Of a stretch of 64,000 nt of DNA, positions 269-57,977 are shown one piece after another. A program made the translations under genes and the position numbers. The notes under the pieces are model-generated. The model worked only from the letters and a program-made list of their open reading frames with translations, had not been told where the DNA came from and did not search any database. Numbering within the stretch: position 1 is the stretch's first letter; each line of letters opens with the position of its first letter. The stretch is taken from the sequence record MN453779.2; one strand, written 5' to 3'.

Positions 269-303
269 GACAAAAGTTTCCTTTTATTAATTTTTTACAA
301 GCC

Positions 304-337
304 CTATAATATTTCAGACCGATATTATTAGAATGTA
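304..337 (+). promoter_or_regulatory. Putative early (virion-RNAP) promoter, 34-bp motif copy 1
   Basis: CTATAATATTTCAGACCGATATTATTAGAATGTA; aligns ungapped with five other intergenic copies; TATTA[C/T] core resembles the phiKZ early promoter; lies upstream of a nvRNAP subunit. Confidence 0.7.
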
Positions 338-4927: not shown

Positions 4928-5323
4928 ATGAAAAAGTTTTATTGCTTTACTGCTGGTCAATTGGTACCTTCCTGGGTTGTCGATTTTGTTTCCCACGACC
5001 GTGAATCAGAATTTAATAATAAAAATGCCAAGATAGTTTTCTCCAGTTCTTGTATAGGTATTAAAGAAGACGACGGACATGTCAAACTTCTTAGACTCAA
5101 TGATAAAAATGATGACCAAAATCATTTTTATATAAAAATTGACGATATGGTTAACGCAGATGTTGGTGGTGTCGGTAAGGGTCGCGGTATTCATATCTCA
5201 AGTAGAAGTCACCAAAAAGATTTTGGTAAGGGTCTTCACTATTCACACTCTATTGTAAATGGCAAAGAAGTCCTAACTCAACTGAAAGGATCCGATGATG
5301 TCTCTATCCAAGGAAGTAAATAA
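4928..5323 (+). CDS. Hypothetical protein, 131 aa
   Basis: ATG with upstream AAGGA; tightly packed after the previous ORF. Confidence 0.75.
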   Translation: MKKFYCFTAGQLVPSWVVDFVSHDRESEFNNKNAKIVFSSSCIGIKEDDGHVKLLRLNDKNDDQNHFYIKIDDMVNADVGGVGKGRGIHISSRSHQKDFGKGLHYSHSIVNGKEVLTQLKGSDDVSIQGSK

Positions 5324-5414
5324 ACTCTTTGACGAAATAGAGCTCAAAATCTCTAAACTCCAAAAGAGACAGGTTGAGCGCAAAGAACCTGCTCAAACCC
5401 CTAAAAAGTCATAG
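5295..5414 (+). CDS. Small 39-aa ORF below the ORF-track cutoff
   Basis: AAAGGA at 5285-5290, then MMSLSKEVNKLFDEIELKISKLQKRQVERKEPAQTPKKS*; stop lies just before a hairpin. Confidence 0.55.
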   Translation: MMSLSKEVNKLFDEIELKISKLQKRQVERKEPAQTPKKS

Positions 5415-5416
5415 AA

Positions 5417-5451
5417 GTAAACTAAGGAGTGGTTTTCACCACTCCGTTTAC
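5417..5451 (+). terminator. Hairpin terminator
   Basis: GGAGTGGT-TTTC-ACCACTCC with outer GTAAAC/GTTTAC arms. Confidence 0.6.
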
Positions 5452-5564
5452 AAAAGTGCATTAATAAAAACAGTGGATATAATTCGTTAGAAACCAATCT
5501 TTTGTGACCCCTTTCCTAGAGGTTAAATGATATAACGTTTTATGTGTTCTGATGGAGATACCTA

Positions 5565-7706
5565 ATGAGAAAGACGTTAGAGGTTTATAAAGCTAGTACC
5601 TACGTTAGGCTCACTGGGTATAAACCGGAATTAGTTAAACAGATATTAATGCCTTTTTGTAAACGTAACTTTGCAAGAGTACAAAAGGTTCCAGGTGATT
5701 TATACGGAACACATAAGTGGGAAATCACCCATGTGTTCGCGAGATTCAATAATGATAAAACAGAATTAAGGTTCTGTTCATCAATGCTACCTGAACTAAT
5801 TAAACTCATGACTAGTTCCGGTTATAAAGAGTCACGCATTTCTATTCAAGACGAAAAGGTAATTAAACCTAAAAAGGTAGTATTACCTTTACTTAATCCA
5901 AAGATTAAACCAAGGGATGAAGAACAGGAAGAGTTCTGCGAGTTCATGATGAACGAAGATCCTCTTTCTATTAACAACCTTCCGCCGGGGAGGGGTAAAG
6001 CACAGCCATTATCATCACTAGTCAAAGTTCCAAATGGCTGGAAAAAGATGGGTGATATCCGACCGGGTGATAAAGTTACCGCTTGGGATGGTACAACTGT
6101 TAATGTTCTTTCTATACATCCACAGGGTGTGAAAGACATTTACGAGTTCACCTTTGCTGATGGAAGAACAGCTAAAAGTACCCTAGATCACCTTTGGAAG
6201 GTCTTTGATGCTGTATTGGATACTTGGGTGGTGTTAACAACCAAAGAGATCATACAGGGCGATGTAAAGCGTTTTTCAATACCATTGTTTAAACCTTCAA
6301 AAGAAGAATACGAAGATTTAAATAATCAGTTGGAAATGAACTGCTTGGTAATTGATGATAAAGTTGAAGAACGAACCTTTATGGCGAGTCGTGCCGAATA
6401 CATTACTGAGTCAGTAAGATCGTTAGGTGGAATTTGTGAGTGTAAATATAGTGATGGATTTTTCACAGTAACTGGAGACATAAGTCCTGTAGAAAATAAA
6501 CTCGGTATTGTGTCGGTGTTCAAGATCAGTCAAGAAGAAGCTCAATGTATTTCTATTGACCATCCAGATCACTTGTACATCACTGATAACTACGTAGTAA
6601 CACACAACACGTTCTGCGCCCTATACTCAGCACACCATGTTGGTGAAAGAGTTCTTATCACAGTTCTGCCACGGTTCGTTGATATCTGGGTTAAAGCGTT
6701 TGGTGAGTTTTACAATATCAAACCTGAAGATGTAGTAGTGGCTGACATCATTGGCGTTCCTGAACTACATCAAGCTATCGTTAATAACGTGATAGACCCT
6801 AAGATCATCATTCTTCCTTTAACTAAGATTGATATTTATCTGAAGAAAATGAGAGATGATGAAACTCTACCAAGTCTTGATCAAGTGTTCAATGATCTTG
6901 GTTGTGGGATCCGTGTTATTGACGAAGCGCATGAATCGATCTATTCGGTTTATAGTAGTTTGATGTTTGGTAACCACAAACGCACTTTTGTGTTATCAGG
7001 GACATTGAAAGGTGATGATGAATTTGTAAACAAAATTTACAATGCAATCTTTCCCTTTAGTTGTTACCTGAGATCTCCAGAACACACACCTTACATGCAC
7101 GTTGTTGCTTATTTCCATCGAATGGATTTATTTAAACATCGTATAAATACAAAAGGTTTTGGTGGTTATAGCCACGTAAAATTTGAGCAAGGGATATTAA
7201 AGAAACCTTGTTTATTTGAAAACTACTACCAAATGCTTTTAGGTGCGTATAAACAGTTTTATTTGGACGACTACTTAGAAGGTCAAAAGTCAATGTGGTT
7301 TTTTGCCACTACTGAGTTTTGTGATAAGTTCAATGAAAGGTTACTTGTTGACTATCCAGAGTTAGATTCTATTGTCTTTAACTCTAAGACTAGTAAAAAG
7401 GACCCAAATGGATACAGAGAACACACCAATGTCGTAACAACGCCAGGATCTTGCGGTACCGGAAAAGACATACCCAAGCTCTTTACAGTGTTCTCACCTA
7501 TAGCTGTGTCTTCTTCCCAGCGTAACAACCAAATGGTCTGTCGCACTAGACCAGTTGATAAATGGTGGCCAGAACTAATGCCGTACTTTGTTTATTTTGT
7601 TTGTCAAGATGAGAAAAAGCAAGTAGAGTACGGTAGAAAGAGAAGGGAACTTTTTAATGGTGTTTGTAAGAAGTTTTCTATTATCGATAGTGGTGTAAGA
7701 ATGTAA
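5565..7706 (+). CDS. Superfamily 2 (DEAH-box) helicase, phiKZ gp75-like, interrupted by an intein
   Basis: Walker A PPGRGK/T split by the intein, VIDEAH, SGT (motif III), TPGSCGTGKDIP (motif V), QMVCRTR (motif VI). Confidence 0.88.
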   Translation: MRKTLEVYKASTYVRLTGYKPELVKQILMPFCKRNFARVQKVPGDLYGTHKWEITHVFARFNNDKTELRFCSSMLPELIKLMTSSGYKESRISIQDEKVIKPKKVVLPLLNPKIKPRDEEQEEFCEFMMNEDPLSINNLPPGRGKAQPLSSLVKVPNGWKKMGDIRPGDKVTAWDGTTVNVLSIHPQGVKDIYEFTFADGRTAKSTLDHLWKVFDAVLDTWVVLTTKEIIQGDVKRFSIPLFKPSKEEYEDLNNQLEMNCLVIDDKVEERTFMASRAEYITESVRSLGGICECKYSDGFFTVTGDISPVENKLGIVSVFKISQEEAQCISIDHPDHLYITDNYVVTHNTFCALYSAHHVGERVLITVLPRFVDIWVKAFGEFYNIKPEDVVVADIIGVPELHQAIVNNVIDPKIIILPLTKIDIYLKKMRDDETLPSLDQVFNDLGCGIRVIDEAHESIYSVYSSLMFGNHKRTFVLSGTLKGDDEFVNKIYNAIFPFSCYLRSPEHTPYMHVVAYFHRMDLFKHRINTKGFGGYSHVKFEQGILKKPCLFENYYQMLLGAYKQFYLDDYLEGQKSMWFFATTEFCDKFNERLLVDYPELDSIVFNSKTSKKDPNGYREHTNVVTTPGSCGTGKDIPKLFTVFSPIAVSSSQRNNQMVCRTRPVDKWWPELMPYFVYFVCQDEKKQVEYGRKRRELFNGVCKKFSIIDSGVRM
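6000..6608 (+). mobile_element. Class 3 mini-intein, 203 aa, in the helicase P-loop
   Basis: Starts AQPLSSLVKVPNGWKKMGDIRPGD; block B STLDHLW; block F AQCISID; ends VVTHN followed by extein Thr. Ala1 plus the W-C-T triad; no intact LAGLIDADG domain. Confidence 0.92.
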
Positions 7707-9236: not shown

Positions 9237-9333
9237 TAATTTACTTTTTCTATTTACTGACCAAGGATTTCTTTGTCACAAATACCTTTTACTACCCCAG
9301 ACGTTTATAGTTAAAGGGATATAAATCCCTACT

Positions 9334-9367
9334 CTATAATTTCTCAGACAGATATAATCCCAATGCA
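9334..9367 (+). promoter_or_regulatory. Putative early promoter, 34-bp motif copy 2 (divergent)
   Basis: CTATAATTTCTCAGACAGATATAATCCCAATGCA upstream of the HNH gene; 5' half matches the consensus, 3' half is degenerate. Confidence 0.5.
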
Positions 9368-16346: not shown

Positions 16347-17270
16347 TTATTTGGAGATCAACTCACGAACCCCTTCCATTACTTGGTTGATTTTAATAAT
16401 TTTGGCATCACAATAATTAATTAAACTTGTTAGGTTATTAGATACAGCAACCAATTTCTTACATAAAGATTTAACCTTATCAGAATGAAGATTAGACTCT
16501 ATATCGGAACTATTTTCTTGCCTTTTAGCTAGTTCATTATTGTGTTCAAGATCTTTAGTAACTTCGGCCAGGGTCTCGGTAACTATCGCTCTCATCTTAC
16601 TAAATAATTTTTGTAATTCAACGAGTGGGGGAGTTGCTTCAAAAATGCTAACTCGTTCGTTATTTTCGTTATAAAAGTATTTAGTTGCATGTTTTTCAGT
16701 TATTACGCCAATGCGACTATTTATCTCTTCCAATTGTGCCGCTTTAGATCTTAGATCTGATATGGAGATCCCTGGTATTTCCTTTAACCTAGATCCTACA
16801 ATCCCTGTAGTAAACATATCTTCACTGTATTTGCGTGTAAAGGTCTCGCATTTGTCAGTTTCTAACTTAATTTTTTCATTATCCATTAATCTTTCAATGC
16901 GACTCCTTTCCAATCGATAAGGATCAAAATCCTTATCATTCCGTTTACCCATAATTTCCTTGCTGACTTTCTCAGTATTTTTTACAGCGTCATCAATCAC
17001 TTTAGCTTGTTTAGAGCCTTTACTACCAAAGAAGAAATCACGTATTGCTTTAATAAAGTTTTTAATCATTTCATAAACTTTAGTAGCGCCAGCTTTAACA
17101 GAAGACATGAACCCTTCTGTTCCAGATCGGTGTTTAAAATCAACACCGTTGAGTTTAAGAACTGTTTTAGCATAAACTGAATCTGGTGATTCTAGATCAC
17201 CATTAGACAGGGATTCAAAACCATTCAAAGTACTTAATACATGTTCTAAATTATCAATATTAACATTCAT
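16347..17270 (-). CDS. Putative head (ejection-type) protein, paralog of 40690..41583
   Basis: Shares YA.TVLKL.G, a GxE cleavage motif (GTEGF) and IKAIRDFFFG with 40690..41583. Confidence 0.65.
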   Translation of the reverse strand: MNVNIDNLEHVLSTLNGFESLSNGDLESPDSVYAKTVLKLNGVDFKHRSGTEGFMSSVKAGATKVYEMIKNFIKAIRDFFFGSKGSKQAKVIDDAVKNTEKVSKEIMGKRNDKDFDPYRLERSRIERLMDNEKIKLETDKCETFTRKYSEDMFTTGIVGSRLKEIPGISISDLRSKAAQLEEINSRIGVITEKHATKYFYNENNERVSIFEATPPLVELQKLFSKMRAIVTETLAEVTKDLEHNNELAKRQENSSDIESNLHSDKVKSLCKKLVAVSNNLTSLINYCDAKIIKINQVMEGVRELISK

Positions 17271-17302
17271 TTACTTTATTTCCATTTAGTTAATTACAAA
17301 GC

Positions 17303-17354
17303 ATTTAAGATCCATAAAATTTCGGACCTATATTACTAGAGTGTATAAACATGA
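17303..17354 (+). promoter_or_regulatory. 52-bp repeat copy A, containing early promoter motif copy 3 (17312-17345)
   Basis: ATTTAAGATCCATA, 10 variable nt, then CCTATATTACTAGAGTGTATAAACATGA; identical blocks recur at 57926-57977. Confidence 0.85.
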
Positions 17355-17906: not shown

Positions 17907-17938
17907 AGTTACCTACTCCCAACTGGGAGTAGGTAACT
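17907..17938 (+). terminator. Hairpin terminator
   Basis: AGTTACCTACTCCC-AACT-GGGAGTAGGTAACT. Confidence 0.8.
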
Positions 17939-17962
17939 AATACTATTTTATTTTTACTCTTT

Positions 17963-17996
17963 CTATAATTTCTTAAACTGATATTATTAGACTGTA
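17963..17996 (+). promoter_or_regulatory. Putative early promoter, 34-bp motif copy 4
   Basis: CTATAATTTCTTAAACTGATATTATTAGACTGTA upstream of the accessory gene cluster. Confidence 0.7.
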
Positions 17997-18031: not shown

Positions 18032-18565
18032 ATGGAAAATAAAGTTTGTAAGTCCACATTAAAAGTTGGTAACGACTTCCCTATAGCTGAAGTCTTTTTC
18101 CTTGAGAGGGATTTACCGCATTTGGAGTCTCTTTTAGGTTCTCTTTATAATAAATTTAAACTTGATACTACCACATTAGGTTGGGTTGAGTCCTTTCCTA
18201 ATGAACTATCAAAGTTGTTCTGTGTCACAAAGGACTTTCAATTTGTTTATCACACTCTTAATTACAATGCAACATCACCTAGTGAAAGATTAATACGAAA
18301 GTTAGAAAGAGAAGAAGTATATCAAGAAATACATAATTCCCGTGATATTCACGATCTGCTAACTAATGGCACTATATTTTTTACAAATAGATTACTTTCA
18401 GAACCTGTGAATAGTTTTAAAGTAAAAGCGATTTCGGAAATGGAAAGAATAGAGAAACTTCTGAAAGAAGTAGATCTTCAACTATCCCCAGAACAAGAAG
18501 TAAAACTATTGCGCAAAATTGTCAAAGAACAGCAATCTATTATAAATAACCTAAAAGGAATCTAA
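18032..18565 (+). CDS. Hypothetical protein with the shared C-terminal module, 177 aa
   Basis: AAGGAG RBS; C-terminal DLQLSPEQEVKLLRKIV. Confidence 0.8.
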   Translation: MENKVCKSTLKVGNDFPIAEVFFLERDLPHLESLLGSLYNKFKLDTTTLGWVESFPNELSKLFCVTKDFQFVYHTLNYNATSPSERLIRKLEREEVYQEIHNSRDIHDLLTNGTIFFTNRLLSEPVNSFKVKAISEMERIEKLLKEVDLQLSPEQEVKLLRKIVKEQQSIINNLKGI

Positions 18566-18567
18566 TC

Positions 18568-19512
18568 ATGGACCACAATTACCCCGAGTTGAACCCAGTC
18601 GTTATTTTGCGTTTGTCTTACTTAGAACCAAGAGAAGAAGTACTAGGTGTTATTTATTTACGTAAAGAATCTGCGGAACGTTTCAAATTAAACGTTAAGG
18701 AATTGCTAGGTGATAAGTTCAATCTAGTTGAACTAAATCATAAGTCAAACTTTGACGAGTATCTTCAAAAATCTAAACCTATCATTAGTGTAGAAAGTAA
18801 CGTGTGTTTTATGTTTGTCCCATTTGTTTTCAATGAAACTCGTTGGGAATTCATGAGAAAGTTGCGATGCACTGAATATGACAATACCAAGAATGTCACT
18901 ACCGCAAAAGAACTTTTCTGTAATGTAGAATTTGATACAATGACTGCTTTACAATTAAAGGGGGAACATGCGGAACCTTCTATTGAATTCCTGGGTAACA
19001 AAATGAATACTGAAGATGTAACAATTAATCCAAAGGAGAAATTAATTTCAATGAGTTTGCTCTCACACACTAACGATAACCTTGGAACGTTATGGTGTTT
19101 TGAGCGCAGCAAAGAACTTTATGAATCCAAACTTAAAATGTACACTGGTGTTGAAGTGTTAGTCAGTGATCCCCTAGCCTTATGTTCATATACACGAAAT
19201 CGTGATCAAGAGGTCTTCACCCACCGCTGTATGAATAATCCAGCGATTTTTATAACCAGTGATTATTCTACCCCGCCATTTCCTCTGAAAAATATTGCTA
19301 TCAGCATTCCTGCCAGCGGTAGTGTAAGAAAACTCTTGGATGAACTTTCTGGTAATGTTAAACTAAATGCTACACCAGTAAAATCTGAACCAATTGTAGA
19401 TGTTGAAGAAGATCTCAAAACTGTTGAGAATATTCTCGCTAAATATGAACTTAGGCTGACAGCAGAACAAAAATGTAAGTTCCTTGAGGAACTGGTCAAA
19501 GTTCTGGGTTAA
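18568..19512 (+). CDS. Hypothetical protein with the shared C-terminal module, 314 aa
   Basis: AAAGGA RBS; C-terminal ELRLTAEQKCKFLEELV. Confidence 0.8.
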   Translation: MDHNYPELNPVVILRLSYLEPREEVLGVIYLRKESAERFKLNVKELLGDKFNLVELNHKSNFDEYLQKSKPIISVESNVCFMFVPFVFNETRWEFMRKLRCTEYDNTKNVTTAKELFCNVEFDTMTALQLKGEHAEPSIEFLGNKMNTEDVTINPKEKLISMSLLSHTNDNLGTLWCFERSKELYESKLKMYTGVEVLVSDPLALCSYTRNRDQEVFTHRCMNNPAIFITSDYSTPPFPLKNIAISIPASGSVRKLLDELSGNVKLNATPVKSEPIVDVEEDLKTVENILAKYELRLTAEQKCKFLEELVKVLG

Positions 19513-19517
19513 TTATT

Positions 19518-19554
19518 AACTTCCTTCTCTTTAATAGGGAAGGAAGTTTCTTTT
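19518..19554 (+). terminator. Hairpin terminator
   Basis: AACTTCCTTCTCT-TTAAT-AGGGAAGGAAGTT followed by TCTTTT. Confidence 0.75.
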
Positions 19555-19574
19555 ACTATAAAGGATTTTTATTT

Positions 19575-20144
19575 ATGAAACTAGAAATAAAAGAAATGTT
19601 AACTCGTTTTGCAAATGGTGCTTTCACCAAGGTTTTCTTTACAGCAGGCGGAATTCTACTTACATGGGATAAAAACATTAATCCATTAGAAGCATCTGGG
19701 ATACCTTCTCCTTATTCAACTGCGAGATTTAAATATCTTCAGGCTTTAGTAGATAATGAGTATATTGAATTTGGATTTGGCGAAACCTTGACATTCCGCT
19801 TTTTGGTGATATATGTTCCTAGCAAGAAGGAACTTGTTACCAAATACCTGTTTAAAGTTTCTGATATTTCTATCCCGGACTGTGTTGAATATAAAACCAA
19901 CTACGTCTCTAAAGATCTGTTCTCAGCACTTAATGTTATCAGAAATAGTTTCACACCCACAGGTGTAATCGACTTTGAAACAGTTAGAGTAAAGGATCCA
20001 ATTGTCGAATTGCCGAAATGGTCTTTGCACAAAGAAACTTACACCAATCAAGAAGTACAAGAACTATTAGAAGAGTTTAAGAAAGAGATGGTAGAATCAA
20101 CCAATCAACTCTTTAATCGTTTTATTAACCGCATTAGTAAGTAA
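19575..20144 (+). CDS. Hypothetical protein, 189 aa
   Basis: AAGGA RBS; C-terminal YTNQEVQELLEEF is a weaker match to the shared module. Confidence 0.8.
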   Translation: MKLEIKEMLTRFANGAFTKVFFTAGGILLTWDKNINPLEASGIPSPYSTARFKYLQALVDNEYIEFGFGETLTFRFLVIYVPSKKELVTKYLFKVSDISIPDCVEYKTNYVSKDLFSALNVIRNSFTPTGVIDFETVRVKDPIVELPKWSLHKETYTNQEVQELLEEFKKEMVESTNQLFNRFINRISK

Positions 20145-20152
20145 GGATTTAT

Positions 20153-20674
20153 ATGAGTAGCAATCGCAATACCTACAATAATGAAGATTTTGTTTACATG
20201 TGTAAACTGTTACAAAACCACGAAATAGTACTAGAAAAATTTGGAACTCATTCTATTGCACTAGTAAAAACAAAGAACAATTTCCAGGAAATTGAAGAGA
20301 TTTCCGAAATATTAAACTCTTACCTTGAAATAAAAGAAGAAGATAGCTCCAATCGTTGGGTTTCTTATAATCACATGGCTGTGTTTTCATCAACATGGAA
20401 ACACTTCAAAGAAGAATACGTATTCGGGAATCCAGTTAAAGCGATTATTCATTATTGTGAAAGTATCGGCAAAGAAGAAAGTACATTCTTCCGTCATACT
20501 GACCTACAGCCAGAGAGTGAGACCCTAAAACAGTTCCTAGAACTATCTGAGAAGATGACCAAGGTCGGATTGACTCTAACGCCTGAACAAGAGAATACTC
20601 TTCTTCACAACGTTATTGACGAGCTGTCAGCAGAGATTGCAAGTCTTAAGTTAAAGATAGAAGATCTCTCTTAA
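20153..20674 (+). CDS. Hypothetical protein with the shared C-terminal module, 173 aa
   Basis: AAGGA RBS; C-terminal GLTLTPEQENTLLHNVI. Confidence 0.8.
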   Translation: MSSNRNTYNNEDFVYMCKLLQNHEIVLEKFGTHSIALVKTKNNFQEIEEISEILNSYLEIKEEDSSNRWVSYNHMAVFSSTWKHFKEEYVFGNPVKAIIHYCESIGKEESTFFRHTDLQPESETLKQFLELSEKMTKVGLTLTPEQENTLLHNVIDELSAEIASLKLKIEDLS

Positions 20675-20683
20675 CAACAGACC

Positions 20684-20717
20684 TAACTCACTTCTCCTTA
20701 ATTGGAGAAGTGAGTTA
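20684..20717 (+). terminator. Hairpin terminator
   Basis: TAACTCACTTCTCC-TTAATT-GGAGAAGTGAGTTA. Confidence 0.75.
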
Positions 20718-20747: not shown

Positions 20748-21503
20748 ATGAAACCTACTACACTCACTGAAATACTTAATCTTGACGATGATCTTGATAA
20801 CTATCACAAACGCGTACAGCAACGTTCTGAGTACATCCAAGCTCAACTACTCCTAGACCCTAACTTCGTCGCATACGACGTTCTAGAGTACGTAGGATCG
20901 AAAGCTGACTCGATAACTCAATACAAGTACATAATTGGAACAGATGGATCTTTCCACTCCCCTGATAGATACGGAAATTGGAGAACTTTACTTCCTAAAC
21001 ATAAAGGAGGATCTGTTTTGATGACTGTTAAGCACGGAACCTCTAAAACATCTTTTTCTTTAACTAGGGCAATAGCTTCTACATTTATCCCAATGGGTCC
21101 AGAAATAAGGGAACTTAATTTCTCCCTTATTAAAGTAGCCTTTGATAAAGATAAAGTCACCATACCTACTTTGCAAACTACCTTCTGGTGTACTGCTAGT
21201 GATGTTAATAACGCTAAATTCAAAAAGGATCTTGAAACCAAAGGAATTCTTTCTACTTCCATTAAACCTTTGCTAGGTGAAGTTACTACCCCTGGTAAGT
21301 ACCTAGGAACTAAGTTTATACTAGCTGGTGTCGATATGTTCAAACAAGTAGGTTGGTCAAGAGGTAATCTCTCTAGACATCTATCAGGAATCCTACCTAA
21401 TGCTTATGGTTGTAAGTGGAGAACGCCTACAGAGGAAGAAATGAATGAGATAACACTAGGTGTAACTGATACACTGGTGCAATATTCTAAATCAATTAAA
21501 TAA
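20748..21503 (+). CDS. Degenerate HNH-family paralog lacking the catalytic motif, 251 aa
   Basis: Same N-terminal domain (TLTEILNL...RVQQRSEYIQAQLLLDP), RAIASTFIP and C-terminal G.F.L.G...G..W module, but no NHxDG...N. Confidence 0.7.
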   Translation: MKPTTLTEILNLDDDLDNYHKRVQQRSEYIQAQLLLDPNFVAYDVLEYVGSKADSITQYKYIIGTDGSFHSPDRYGNWRTLLPKHKGGSVLMTVKHGTSKTSFSLTRAIASTFIPMGPEIRELNFSLIKVAFDKDKVTIPTLQTTFWCTASDVNNAKFKKDLETKGILSTSIKPLLGEVTTPGKYLGTKFILAGVDMFKQVGWSRGNLSRHLSGILPNAYGCKWRTPTEEEMNEITLGVTDTLVQYSKSIK

Positions 21504-21514
21504 GGTGAATTATA

Positions 21515-22513
21515 ATGTCCATTAAAACATTAACTGAAATACTTAACCTTTCTCTTGAATTGAAAGATTATGAAGAACGTGTACAAAAGAGATATGATTA
21601 TATTCAGGAACAACTAGAGAAAGATCCTGAGTTTGTAGCTTATGACTATCTGGAATATTGGGATGGTAGAGCAGATATACATTATATCATTGATAAGTAT
21701 GTTATTGACACTAAAGGAAACTATTATCAACTGAAAGATAACGTCTGGACTCTTGCGCGTACTAAACACGACGAAGGATATAAAGAAAAGAACGTTAATA
21801 TGGGTAATAGTACGTACCGGATGTTTCAAACACATCGTGCTATTGTCACCACATTCATTCCTAGGTATGAACACCTTAAAGACGTCCCCTATTGGAAACT
21901 TGAAGCTAACCATAAGGATGGGGTTAAAGAGAATAATGATTTCACTAACTTGGAATGGATGACTAAAGCCGAGAACAACGCTCACGCAGTAGAAATAGGT
22001 TCCCAGTTATCCGGCGTGAATGACCCTAATACTATCCCTTATCTAGCTACAGTCGTTATGGAAGGAAAGTATAAAGGTCAACAGTTTGTACTTGCAGGAA
22101 CTGCGGCATTTGAAAAGGAGGGGATATCAAGAAGTTCTGTTAGGGATCAATCAGAGGGTAAATTCCGCGCTATTGCTGGATGTACTTGGAAGGTTATCAC
22201 TAAAGAGGAAGCCAAAGATTATCCGCAAGGAACCCCAGAGGGATTTATGACTTTCCTTAAATCCAATAGTACTTTATCAGATCCTAAGGTTAAACCAGTG
22301 TTAGGAGTGGTACAAAATGGAGCTTTTAAAGGACATCATTTTTGTTTATTTGGCGGGAAACACATAGTGGAAAACGGATTTGGTCAAGCTTATGTGTCCG
22401 GACATGCCAAACACAATAAAGTTTATAAAGGAGTATTATGGAAATATATAACTCAGGAAGAAGCTGCTAACTACCCAAGAGGTCTTGATAGGGAAATCTT
22501 TGCAACTTTGTAA
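21515..22513 (+). CDS. Free-standing HNH homing endonuclease, 332 aa
   Basis: HRAIVTTFIP...EANHKDGVKENNDFTNLEWMTKAENNAHA; two tandem C-terminal putative DNA-binding repeats ending WK.IT.EEA..YP.G. Confidence 0.88.
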   Translation: MSIKTLTEILNLSLELKDYEERVQKRYDYIQEQLEKDPEFVAYDYLEYWDGRADIHYIIDKYVIDTKGNYYQLKDNVWTLARTKHDEGYKEKNVNMGNSTYRMFQTHRAIVTTFIPRYEHLKDVPYWKLEANHKDGVKENNDFTNLEWMTKAENNAHAVEIGSQLSGVNDPNTIPYLATVVMEGKYKGQQFVLAGTAAFEKEGISRSSVRDQSEGKFRAIAGCTWKVITKEEAKDYPQGTPEGFMTFLKSNSTLSDPKVKPVLGVVQNGAFKGHHFCLFGGKHIVENGFGQAYVSGHAKHNKVYKGVLWKYITQEEAANYPRGLDREIFATL

Positions 22514-52440: not shown

Positions 52441-52460
52441 GTCTTATGTTTTTCTCTGTT

Positions 52461-52494
52461 CTATATTTTTTCAGATAGATATTATTAAGTTGTA
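52461..52494 (+). promoter_or_regulatory. Putative early promoter, 34-bp motif copy 5
   Basis: CTATATTTTTTCAGATAGATATTATTAAGTTGTA upstream of the operon containing the nvRNAP beta N-half. Confidence 0.6.
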
Positions 52495-57817: not shown

Positions 57818-57925
57818 TCTATTTCGTCGTGTAATTCTTTTTAAGCAATTGTTTATGTTGATCTAACAGAATGTATGGGTTACTTGTTACTGTTGTTTAG
57901 AAAGCGTTATATAAGCTTTGGTAAT

Positions 57926-57977
57926 ATTTAAGATCCATAGATTTTCAAACCTATATTACTAGAGTGTATAAACATGA
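57926..57977 (+). promoter_or_regulatory. 52-bp repeat copy B, containing early promoter motif copy 6 (57935-57968)
   Basis: 14-bp and 28-bp blocks identical to 17303-17354 at the same spacing. Confidence 0.85.

What the first reader, a model, noticed from the sequence alone, without database searches (positions are those of the whole stretch)
18032..20674. Consecutive early genes with unrelated bodies but a shared C-terminal module
Seen: three proteins end in nearly the same motif: VDLQLSPEQEVKLLRKIV (near 18476), YELRLTAEQKCKFLEELV (near 19450) and VGLTLTPEQENTLLHNVI (near 20570), each preceded by an amphipathic helix. The 19575 protein has a weaker match (YTNQEVQELLEEF). Their N-terminal regions show no similarity by eye, and the cluster follows an early-promoter motif. 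Inference: a portable helical-hairpin tag (LxL[ST]xEQxxx[LF]L) on variable cargo domains, possibly for oligomerisation, docking on a common partner, or localisation to the phage nucleus or a host target, as in polymorphic effector arrays.
Basis: partly seen in the sequence, partly recalled or inferred. Interest (0 to 1): 0.65.

Follow-up and report, generated by a model that had tools for sequence, protein, structure and literature searches.

The report
Shared helical-hairpin tail on variable phage proteins
Three neighbouring early genes of the Aeromonas jumbo phage PS2 have unrelated front parts. All three end in the same small, strongly conserved two-helix hairpin, which nature has repeatedly re-attached to new front parts. 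It is an undescribed, lineage-restricted protein module, most likely for self-association or docking, and its function is untested.

Summary
The window is Aeromonas phage PS2 (Ferozepurvirus, phiKZ-like clade).

- **Shared tail.** PS2_0085, 0086 and 0088 share a C-terminal module of about 40-55 aa. Pairwise BLASTP gives 8e-5 and 2e-4; profile comparison of the tails gives 3e-6 to 3e-3. The motif occurs 3 times in the window against 0.003 expected.
- **Bodies.** They are not detectably related (hhalign E at least 0.016; Foldseek aligns only the tail).
- **Structure.** AlphaFold2 puts the tail as an antiparallel helical hairpin behind a disordered linker. L-x-L-[ST]-x-E-Q is the turn and helix N-cap.
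- **Selection.** The tail is the most constrained part of each gene: dN/dS 0.03-0.12 at dS 0.4-0.9, against 0.16-0.43 for bodies.
- **Range.** A tail profile searched against 1.84 billion proteins finds only this phage clade. There, three tail classes sit on seven BLASTP-distinct bodies, with natural tail-swap chimeras and one tail-less body.
- **Rejected side claim.** The 19575 protein is not a member.
- **Promoter.** The cluster follows a repeated motif that matches the published phiKZ/OBP-type early promoter consensus.

Best reading: a portable oligomerisation or docking hairpin on fast-evolving early accessory proteins, in a recombination hotspot beside HNH genes. Surfaces are class-specific, which argues against one common docking site. 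The scan noted analogous C-terminal tails in other jumbo phages (untested here).

The parts
17907..17938 (+). Terminator-like hairpin that ends the upstream small-protein cassette (PS2_0084)
   Evidence: 14-pair stem with 7 GC pairs, followed by a T-rich tail
17944..17996 (+). Early-promoter-like motif (TCTATAATTTCTTAAACTGATATTATTAGACTGTA core) 36 nt upstream of the g85 start codon
   Evidence: Repeat family D1/D5 with 5-6 copies in the window, all on the + strand upstream of genes. Fits the OBP/N1M2/phiKZ predicted early promoter consensus in PMC7058600 Table 2. Transcription was not measured.
18032..18373 (+). g85 (PS2_0085) N-terminal alpha/beta body, residues 1-114; fast-evolving
   Evidence: AF2 gives bb-a-bbb-a-b-a with pLDDT about 70-90. 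Family identity 0.54 and dN/dS 0.16-0.43, with saturated dS between allele groups. No Pfam, PHROG, NCBIfam or PDB match.
18374..18415 (+). g85 flexible linker, residues 115-128
   Evidence: AF2 pLDDT <50 over 115-136
18416..18565 (+). g85 tail, class T85: helix 129-146, turn VDLQLSPEQ, helix 153-176, stop codon
   Evidence: 36 of 51 positions are >=95% invariant across 26 distinct tails. dN/dS 0.04-0.12 at dS 0.2-0.7.
18568..19395 (+). g86 (PS2_0086) body, residues 1-276. Probably two domains: an N-domain of about 1-140 and a second region that is dispensable in natural variants.
   Evidence: P0092 joins the N-domain directly to the T86 tail. PS1_0088, P0089 and P0094 join the N-domain to the g87 C-helix. 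L008 and P0095 have a replaced N-domain. This body was not folded.
19396..19512 (+). g86 tail, class T86 (…DLKTVENILAKYELRLTAEQKCKFLEELVKVLG): the shortest version, with helix 2 only about 14 residues
   Evidence: dN/dS 0.03-0.10 at dS 0.4-0.9.
19518..19548 (+). Hairpin between g86 and g87 (terminator-like, 13 pairs)
19575..20144 (+). g87 (PS2_0087). NOT a member of the tail family. It is a clade-core gene with its own invariant C-terminal helix (…KETYTNQEVQELL…).
   Evidence: The tail HMM gives no hit. Homologues occur in Ferozepurvirus, Chaoshanvirus and Ludhianavirus. Its C-terminal helix has dN/dS 0.00-0.06.
20153..20473 (+). g88 (PS2_0088) N-terminal alpha/beta body, residues 1-107
   Evidence: AF2 gives a-bb-a-bb-a with pLDDT about 80-91. 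No PDB or BFVD fold match apart from its own entry.
20474..20512 (+). g88 flexible linker, residues 108-120
   Evidence: AF2 pLDDT <50 over 108-120
20513..20674 (+). g88 tail, class T88: helix 123-138, turn VGLTLTPEQ, helix 144-172 with a leucine-zipper-like 3-4 spacing (L151 I155 L158 I162 L165 I169 L172), stop codon
   Evidence: The same tail sits on unrelated bodies in phages CF8 and AerS_266 and in P0023, P0103 and P0104.
20684..20717 (+). Bidirectional terminator-like hairpin after g88
   Evidence: 14-15 pairs on both strands

Best explanation
PS2_0085, 0086 and 0088 are two-part proteins: a compact, rapidly evolving N-terminal alpha/beta 'head', a disordered linker, and a conserved C-terminal alpha-helical hairpin of about 40-55 residues.

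**What the motif is.** L-x-L-[ST]-x-E-Q is the inter-helix turn plus a classical helix N-cap (an S/T-x-x-E capping box with flanking hydrophobic residues). This reading is an inference from the models and textbook helix-capping rules.

**What the hairpin is.** It is an independent, homologous module in three sub-classes (T85, T86, T88). It is restricted to Aeromonas phiKZ-like phages. Recombination has repeatedly moved it onto different heads, in a hypervariable, early-promoter-driven island between the core gene PS2_0082 and the DNA polymerase gene, beside HNH endonuclease genes.

**Most likely mechanism (inferred, not shown).** An isolated two-helix hairpin with two amphipathic faces cannot bury its hydrophobic surface alone. 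It therefore probably pairs with itself, as a dimer forming a four-helix bundle, or with a class-specific partner. That would make the variable heads multivalent or anchored. The heads would be the parts that engage changing host or competitor targets.

**Shown here:** the module, its homology, the predicted fold, purifying selection, and modular exchange.

**Inferred:** oligomerisation or docking, early expression, and the effector role of the heads.
For: **Tail homology and significance:**

**Only three copies in the PS2 genome:**

**Fold:**
- AF2 models show head, linker with pLDDT <50, and hairpin.
- The hairpin resembles generic antiparallel hairpins, many of them dimerisation elements such as histidine-kinase DHp, PKA RI D/D, NblA and Rif1-CTD. 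Z is only 4-5.6, so this shows a common arrangement and nothing more.
- Both helices have 3-4 hydrophobic spacing. g88 helix 2 has L/I at every a/d-type position over 3.5 heptads.

**Selection:** tails have dN/dS 0.03-0.12 at dS 0.4-0.9, against 0.16-0.43 for bodies. Identity over the last 40 residues is 0.89-0.93, against 0.54-0.79 for the rest.

**Portability:**
- Seven BLASTP-distinct body classes carry the tails.
- CF8_0089 and AerS_266 WNV45851 carry T88 on other bodies in the same genomic slot.
- P0022 joins a g85 body to the C-terminal half of g88.
- P0097 has a crossover inside the motif itself.
- P0092 joins the g86 N-domain directly to T86.
- P0103 has two heads and one tail.
- ZPAH34 has a CF8-type head with no tail.

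**Specificity:** the profile search of 1.84e9 representative proteins returns 15 clade members and one LTPEQ-repeat protein, and no generic coiled coils.

**Against obligate heteromers:**
- PS1 lacks T86.
- pAEv1810 and L008 lack g88.
- Chaoshanviruses have only T88.

**Early promoter motif:**
Against:
- Tail pLDDT is only 56-78.
- The g86 tail was not folded, and its second helix is short.
- Within each class even exposed polar residues are invariant: 24 polar invariant positions in T85. That is more constraint than a simple zipper needs, and it may point to a specific partner rather than self-pairing.
- Early timing rests only on a promoter-consensus match. The metatranscriptome contigs do not prove transcription.
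- Some chimeras come from short metagenome contigs and could be assembly errors. However, PS1_0088, pAEv1810_108, CF8_0089 and the AerS_266 gene come from complete isolate genomes.
Confidence: 0.55

Rival explanations
1. One fast-evolving paralogous family. All heads are very diverged copies of a single ancestral alpha/beta domain, duplicated in tandem. The hairpin is simply the slowest-evolving part of that ancestral protein, not a tag moved onto unrelated cargo.
For: - The genes are tandem and in one slot.
- Both folded heads start with a beta-hairpin followed by a helix.
- By eye, all head types show a beta-hairpin ending G-x-[VI]-[YF], then a helix, and later an F-x-F-[IV]-Y-like strand.
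- The top hhalign alignments fall at equivalent N-terminal positions: g85 against CF8-type at E 0.025 over 59 columns, and g86 N-half against its C-half at 19-51 / 20-52.
- g86 and P0103 look like two heads in tandem.
Against: - None of these comparisons is significant (E 0.016-0.4).
- Foldseek of the g88 model against BFVD aligns only the tail of the CF8 protein and finds no g85 or g86 entries.
- Demonstrated chimeras show tails really are exchanged between heads.
- This rival concerns origin. It does not conflict with the proposed function.
Confidence: 0.22
2. A common docking tag. All three tails bind the same site on one conserved phage or host partner, bringing different heads to one place. 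Candidates include the neighbouring core protein g87 through its invariant C-terminal helix, or a shell or vesicle component.
For: - The turn motif is shared across classes.
- Polar surface residues are invariant within each class, which suggests a specific interface.
- g87 is adjacent to the T88 gene in two genera. Its C-terminal helix is kept even in the PS1 deletion chimera.
- The scan's notes report analogous shared tails on early proteins of other jumbo phages (untested).
Against: - Across classes only 5 of about 47 positions are identical, and these are the structural turn and cap residues. Exposed residues differ between T85, T86 and T88, so a single shared binding site is unlikely.
- No partner was identified, and no complex prediction could be run.
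- Ludhianaviruses have g87 but no tail-bearing genes nearby.
Confidence: 0.15
3. An address tag. The hairpin targets the heads to the phage nucleus, the early-infection vesicle or the capsid (packaged or injected proteins).
For: - The phage belongs to a chimallin- and PhuZ-encoding clade (PMC10673249).
- The genes follow an early-type promoter.
- A phiKZ internal-head-protein-like gene (PS2_0083) lies next to the slot (weak, E 0.097; PHROG hits).
Against: - Current literature says chimallivirus nuclear cargo is recognised through surface residues of the folded protein, not a terminal signal (PMC12908238).
- Known capsid-targeting sequences are N-terminal and are cleaved.
- Only three genes per genome carry the module, too few for a general address.
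- No localisation data exist.
Confidence: 0.05
4. Chance or convergence. L-x-L-T-P-E-Q is a common helix N-cap, and the three tails are independent helical ends.
For: The same LTPEQ cap recurs in the unrelated repeat protein P0105. The PDB profile search gives only noise.
Against: - Similarity extends over 30-47 positions with significant E-values.
- There are 3 hits against 0.003 expected.
- The genes are adjacent and share the same head-linker-hairpin architecture.
- The profile is specific to this clade among 1.84e9 proteins.
Confidence: 0.03

Closest known systems
Helical-hairpin dimerisation modules (histidine-kinase DHp domain, PKA regulatory-subunit D/D domain, ROP-like four-helix bundles)
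   Same: Two antiparallel amphipathic helices joined by a tight turn. Weak structural matches to such elements at Z 4-5.6. 3-4 hydrophobic spacing.
   Different: No sequence relationship. The oligomeric state is untested. The Z values are in the range of generic helical arrangements. This hairpin is a C-terminal appendage on a flexible linker.
Ribbon-helix-helix antitoxin/repressor N-termini (for example, TacA/DUF1778-type 'L-R-L-T-P-E-Q', recalled from memory)
   Same: An alternating hydrophobic stretch followed by a T-P-E-Q-capped helix.
   Different: AF2 predicts no beta-strand at the motif, and a helix precedes it. There is no second RHH helix in g86. No Pfam RHH hit. It is C-terminal rather than an N-terminal DNA-binding domain.
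Modular phage proteins with a conserved anchor and a swappable variable domain (tail-fibre or receptor-binding proteins; polymorphic toxin/effector arrays)
   Same: A conserved module plus hypervariable partner domains, exchanged by recombination in a hotspot. Stronger purifying selection on the conserved module.
   Different: The conserved part is C-terminal. The genes are small early-promoter genes, not structural ones. No toxin, immunity or receptor-binding domains are detectable.
Shared C-terminal tails on early proteins of other jumbo phages, noted by this scan (s1-157992 Staphylococcus jumbo phage; s1-157995 phage Noxifer)
   Same: Many dissimilar early proteins end in one conserved C-terminal element, read there as a docking or assembly module.
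   Different: Different motifs and lengths (16-residue and 6-residue tails against a 40-55-residue hairpin). Many more members per genome. These are AI notes and were not checked here.

Membership tests
Ribbon-helix-helix (RHH) domain | N-terminal beta-strand followed by two helices, detectable by Pfam RHH/CopG/DUF1778 models | tested here: not met
   No Pfam hit at E<=0.1. AF2 shows helix-turn-helix with no strand at the motif. g86 ends after one short helix.
TALE-like / LTPEQ repeat proteins | Tandem repeats of about 33-35 aa, each starting L-T-P-[ED]-Q | tested here: not met
   There is a single copy per protein. The only such hit (P0105, five repeats) scores 38.6 bits and aligns only positions 12-30.
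Coiled-coil / helical-bundle oligomerisation module | Amphipathic helices with 3-4 (heptad-like) hydrophobic spacing | tested here: met
   g88 has L151 I155 L158 I162 L165 I169 L172. g85 has L160 I163/V164 I170/I171 L174 I177. Helix 1 is also amphipathic.
Coiled-coil / helical-bundle oligomerisation module | Demonstrated or predicted self-association | not testable with these tools
phiKZ-type early (virion RNA polymerase) transcription unit | AT-rich conserved motif of the TATATTAC / KATATTATY type upstream of the operon | tested here: met
   17944-17996 matches the repeat family and the consensus tabulated in PMC7058600. The general rule is stated in PMC7598289.
phiKZ-type early (virion RNA polymerase) transcription unit | Transcript 5' end and early timing shown experimentally | not testable with these tools
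   Only contigs of wastewater metatranscriptomes are available, and they do not show transcription.
Chimallivirus nuclear-import cargo signal | A transferable element that confers import through PicA/Imp1 | not testable with these tools
   The literature reports surface-patch recognition, not terminal signals (PMC12908238). No localisation data exist for these proteins.
Polymorphic toxin/effector array | Conserved N-terminal trafficking domain, variable C-terminal toxin, and adjacent immunity gene | tested here: not met
   The conserved module is C-terminal. No toxin or immunity family hits in Pfam, PHROGs or NCBIfam.

The most novel reading that the evidence does not exclude
The hairpin is a genuinely transferable address or assembly tag. 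It would recruit interchangeable early 'heads' to one phage-built structure, such as the nuclear shell, the early-infection vesicle, or a g87-centred complex. That would make it the first linear, portable targeting module in nucleus-forming phages. Together with the other tails noted by the scan, it would point to a general design principle of jumbo-phage early proteins.
Probability: 0.07. Interest if true: 0.85.

Novelty: new variant of a known kind. Interest (0 to 1): 0.45.

Why it matters
Early accessory genes of nucleus-forming jumbo phages are mostly uncharacterised and evolve too fast for homology-based annotation.

This case gives a clean, small example of domain architecture in such genes: a strongly constrained C-terminal hairpin, and interchangeable heads that are still being swapped in natural populations. 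It therefore offers:

- **A handle for experiments.** The tail can serve as bait, and tail-less natural variants can serve as controls.
- **A new domain family to add to phage databases.** It currently has no Pfam, PHROG or NCBIfam model.
- **A concrete test of a design hypothesis.** The question is whether jumbo-phage early proteins use shared terminal modules for assembly or targeting.

If the hairpin only dimerises, the finding is a modest annotation gain. If it docks heads onto a phage structure, it would challenge the current view that chimalliviruses lack linear targeting signals.

Tried and rejected
- **g87 as a fourth member:** rejected. The tail HMM gives no hit in the whole genome at E<=10, nor in the window with filters off.
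- **Known families:** Pfam, PHROGs and NCBIfam give nothing above noise for the four proteins. A tail-profile search of PDB sequences gives noise only.
- **Fold searches:** Foldseek against PDB and VIA-align wide on both models give no significant match. The weak REV7/HORMA hit (E 0.024, TM 0.19) and the CutA1 hit (Z 4.1) for the g85 head were discarded as insignificant.
- **ESM Atlas:** no usable hit for g86. The g88 tail gives only a 0.77 lead.
- **IMG/VR scan with the tail alignment:** no relatives.
- **Head-to-head homology:** profile comparisons, including g86 N-half against its C-half, are not significant.
- **Recent gene conversion as the cause of tail similarity:** rejected. The tail DNA has diverged and dS within classes is 0.4-0.9.
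- **Obligate g85/g86/g88 heteromer:** disfavoured by genomes that lack one or two of the three.
- **Complex prediction (g85 tail with g88 tail):** There is no verdict either way.
- **Whole-genome file:** not held for this window. The record was searched through its handle instead.
Full report
**Identity and context**

The stretch is 100% identical to Aeromonas phage PS2 (MN453779.2, 240 kb, genus Ferozepurvirus). Window coordinate plus 62,000 gives the record coordinate. Relatives in the same clade of giant Aeromonas phages carry chimallin, PhuZ and two multisubunit RNA polymerases, so they are phiKZ-like (PMC10673249).

The four ORFs are annotated PS2_0085 to PS2_0088, all 'hypothetical protein'; I call them g85 to g88. 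They lie between a conserved gene (PS2_0082, phrog_14374) and the DNA polymerase gene (phrog_3011), next to one intact and one degenerate HNH endonuclease gene.

**The observation**

- BLASTP aligns only the C-termini: g85 against g88 at E 8e-5, and g85 against g86 at E 2e-4. g86 against g88 is not found pairwise.
- With family profiles built from metagenomic and isolate orthologues, hhalign gives tail-to-tail E-values of 2.8e-6, 4e-4 and 3e-3. Body-to-body E-values are 0.14-0.33.
- The DNA of the three tails has diverged, so the similarity is old and maintained at the protein level.
- A tail HMM finds only these three genes in the whole PS2 genome. It does not find the 19575 protein even with filters off, so the 'weaker match' is rejected.

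**Structure**

AlphaFold2 with family alignments gives the same architecture for both proteins folded.

| Protein | Mean pLDDT | Head | Linker (pLDDT <50) | Tail |
|---|---|---|---|---|
| g88 | 76 | compact alpha/beta, residues 10-105, pLDDT about 88 | 108-120 | helix 123-138, turn, helix 144-172 |
| g85 | 69 | alpha/beta | 115-136 | helix 129-146, turn, helix 153-176 |

The conserved L-x-L-[ST]-x-E-Q is therefore the inter-helix turn plus the N-cap of helix 2. I read it as a capping box with flanking hydrophobic residues; this is an inference.

Both helices show 3-4 hydrophobic spacing, and g88 helix 2 is leucine-zipper-like.

Fold searches find nothing significant for the heads. For the tail they find only generic antiparallel hairpins at Z 4-5.6, many of them dimerisation elements. 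Foldseek against BFVD finds the protein itself and the phage CF8 protein, which aligns over the tail only.

**Selection**

In each family the last 40 residues are the most conserved: identity 0.89-0.93 against 0.54-0.79 for the rest.

Codon analysis gives tails dN/dS of 0.03-0.12 with appreciable synonymous divergence (dS 0.4-0.9). Bodies give 0.16-0.43.

For g85 the body dS is saturated between two allele groups while the tail dS is about 0.5. The gene is therefore mosaic, with old, divergent heads joined to one tail lineage.

**Portability**

The slot is a recombination hotspot. Complete isolate genomes show the following.

- PS1_0088 is the g86 N-domain fused in frame to the g87 C-terminal helix. 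The same chimera recurs in metagenome clusters, one of them with 23 members.
- pAEv1810_108 is g87 fused to the C-terminal half of an HNH protein.
- In Chaoshanvirus phages CF8 and AerS_266, the gene after the g87 homologue has an unrelated head but a T88-class tail.
- ZPAH34 has that head type with no tail.

Metagenomic proteins add more cases.

- P0022 has a g85 head on the C-terminal half of g88.
- P0097 has a crossover inside the motif itself.
- P0023 and P0104 have new heads on T88.
- P0100 and P0095 have new or replaced heads on T86.
- P0092 has the g86 N-domain joined directly to T86.
- P0103 has two heads and one tail.
- P0101 has a distant head on T85.

All-against-all BLASTP groups the heads into seven classes carrying three tail classes. 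Contigs from wastewater runs also show joints in this stretch.

**Specificity**

A profile of the three tails was searched against 1.84 billion representative proteins and returned 16 hits at E<=1e-3. Fifteen are from this phage clade. The sixteenth is a repeat protein with five LTPEQ caps, at 9e-5. No generic coiled coils appear. tblastn against 50,697 phage genomes finds the tail only in Ferozepurvirus and Chaoshanvirus. Ludhianaviruses keep g87 but have no tail-bearing neighbours.

**Promoter**

The stretch 17944-17996, just after a terminator hairpin, is one of 5-6 copies of a + strand repeat that precedes genes in the window. It fits the predicted early promoter consensus listed for OBP, N1M2, 201phi2-1 and phiKZ (PMC7058600). 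That agrees with the rule that a conserved AT-rich motif marks early operons of RNA-polymerase-encoding jumbo phages (PMC7598289). Early timing remains inferred, because metatranscriptome contigs cover the region but do not prove transcription.

**Mechanism**

A two-helix hairpin on a flexible linker with two amphipathic helices is unlikely to be stable alone. Self-pairing or docking is the natural expectation, but this is inference.

Three observations shape the choice between readings.

1. The three genes are not always together, so an obligate heteromer is unlikely.
2. Across classes only five positions are identical, all at the turn and cap. Within each class many exposed polar residues are invariant. 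The classes therefore share a scaffold but present different surfaces, which argues against one common docking site and for class-specific self-association or partners.
3. The literature reports that nuclear cargo of chimalliviruses is selected through folded surface residues, not terminal signals (PMC12908238). This lowers the address-tag reading.

**Origin of the heads**

Sequence and fold searches do not relate them. Both models begin with a beta-hairpin plus helix, and by eye every head type shares this start and a later F-x-F-[IV]-Y-like strand. The best hhalign alignments fall at equivalent positions but are not significant. A single, extremely diverged head fold therefore remains possible (about 0.2). 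It would change the origin story but not the functional reading.

**Verdict**

The 'portable helical hairpin on variable bodies' reading is supported structurally and evolutionarily, but its function is open. It is an undescribed, lineage-restricted module, which I class as a new variant of a known design (conserved oligomerisation or docking module plus swappable domains). The scan's notes mention analogous C-terminal tails on early proteins of other jumbo phages; I did not test those.

Noticed in passing
L004:3669-4217 (PS1_0088); compare window 18568-18996 and 20028-20144: In phage PS1 an in-frame deletion fuses the N-domain of g86 (about 143 aa) to the last about 40 aa of g87. Both the T86 tail and the g87 body are lost. 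The same chimera forms metagenome clusters P0089, P0093 and P0094, the last with 23 members.
   Followed up: partly
window 19575-20144 (g87); L006:3990-4568, L007:4088-4663, L012:3501-4079, L013:3483-4019: g87 is conserved in all three genera of Aeromonas phiKZ-like phages, with a near-invariant C-terminal helix (W-S-L-H-K-E-T-Y-T-N-Q/E-E-V…; dN/dS 0.00-0.06). It is always next to the variable genes. In AerS_266 it is annotated 'HNH homing endonuclease', which no domain search here supports. It is a possible partner of the hairpins, untested.
   Followed up: partly
L005:4677-5792 (pAEv1810_108): g87 (residues 1 to about 180) is fused to the C-terminal half of the HNH protein. The deletion removes g88 and the HNH N-terminal half. 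A short bridging peptide (…CSTELKTSPISS…) also recurs inside the metagenomic protein P0023.
   Followed up: no
window 285-337, 9333-9358, 17293-17345, 17944-17996, 52442-52494, 57916-57968: A repeated + strand motif of about 35-50 nt (…TATAATTTCTCAGAC-GATATTATTAGA-TGTA) precedes genes and matches the OBP/N1M2/phiKZ-type predicted early promoter consensus.
   Followed up: partly
window 20748-21503 and 21515-22513: PS2_0089 shares its N-terminal about 60 aa with the HNH endonuclease PS2_0090 but has no Pfam HNH hit, only a weak PHROG HNH match at 1.4e-3. It looks like a degenerate paralogue. Already noted by the scan (s1-415334).
   Followed up: no
window 16347-17270 (-); L006:2864-3868 and 5282-6289; L012:4578-5585: PS2_0083 gives a weak Pfam phiKZ_IP hit and several PHROG hits. 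It has paralogues that flank the variable slot on the + strand in CF8 and ZPAH34, all starting M-N-V-N-I-[DE]. P0025 is a metagenomic ORF that joins T88 helix 2 to a C-terminal part that by eye resembles this family; this was not tested.
   Followed up: no
window 20712 joined back to 17963, in contigs of runs X19 and X4: Metagenome contigs link the sequence just after the g88 terminator to promoter-like sequence matching 17963 onward. In some relatives, another copy of the early promoter may therefore directly follow this terminator.
   Followed up: no
L012:4090-4473 (ZPAH34 UOX39618.1): A CF8/AerS-type head (127 aa) ends in the linker region and lacks the T88 hairpin. It is a natural tail-less variant, useful as a control.
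   Followed up: partly
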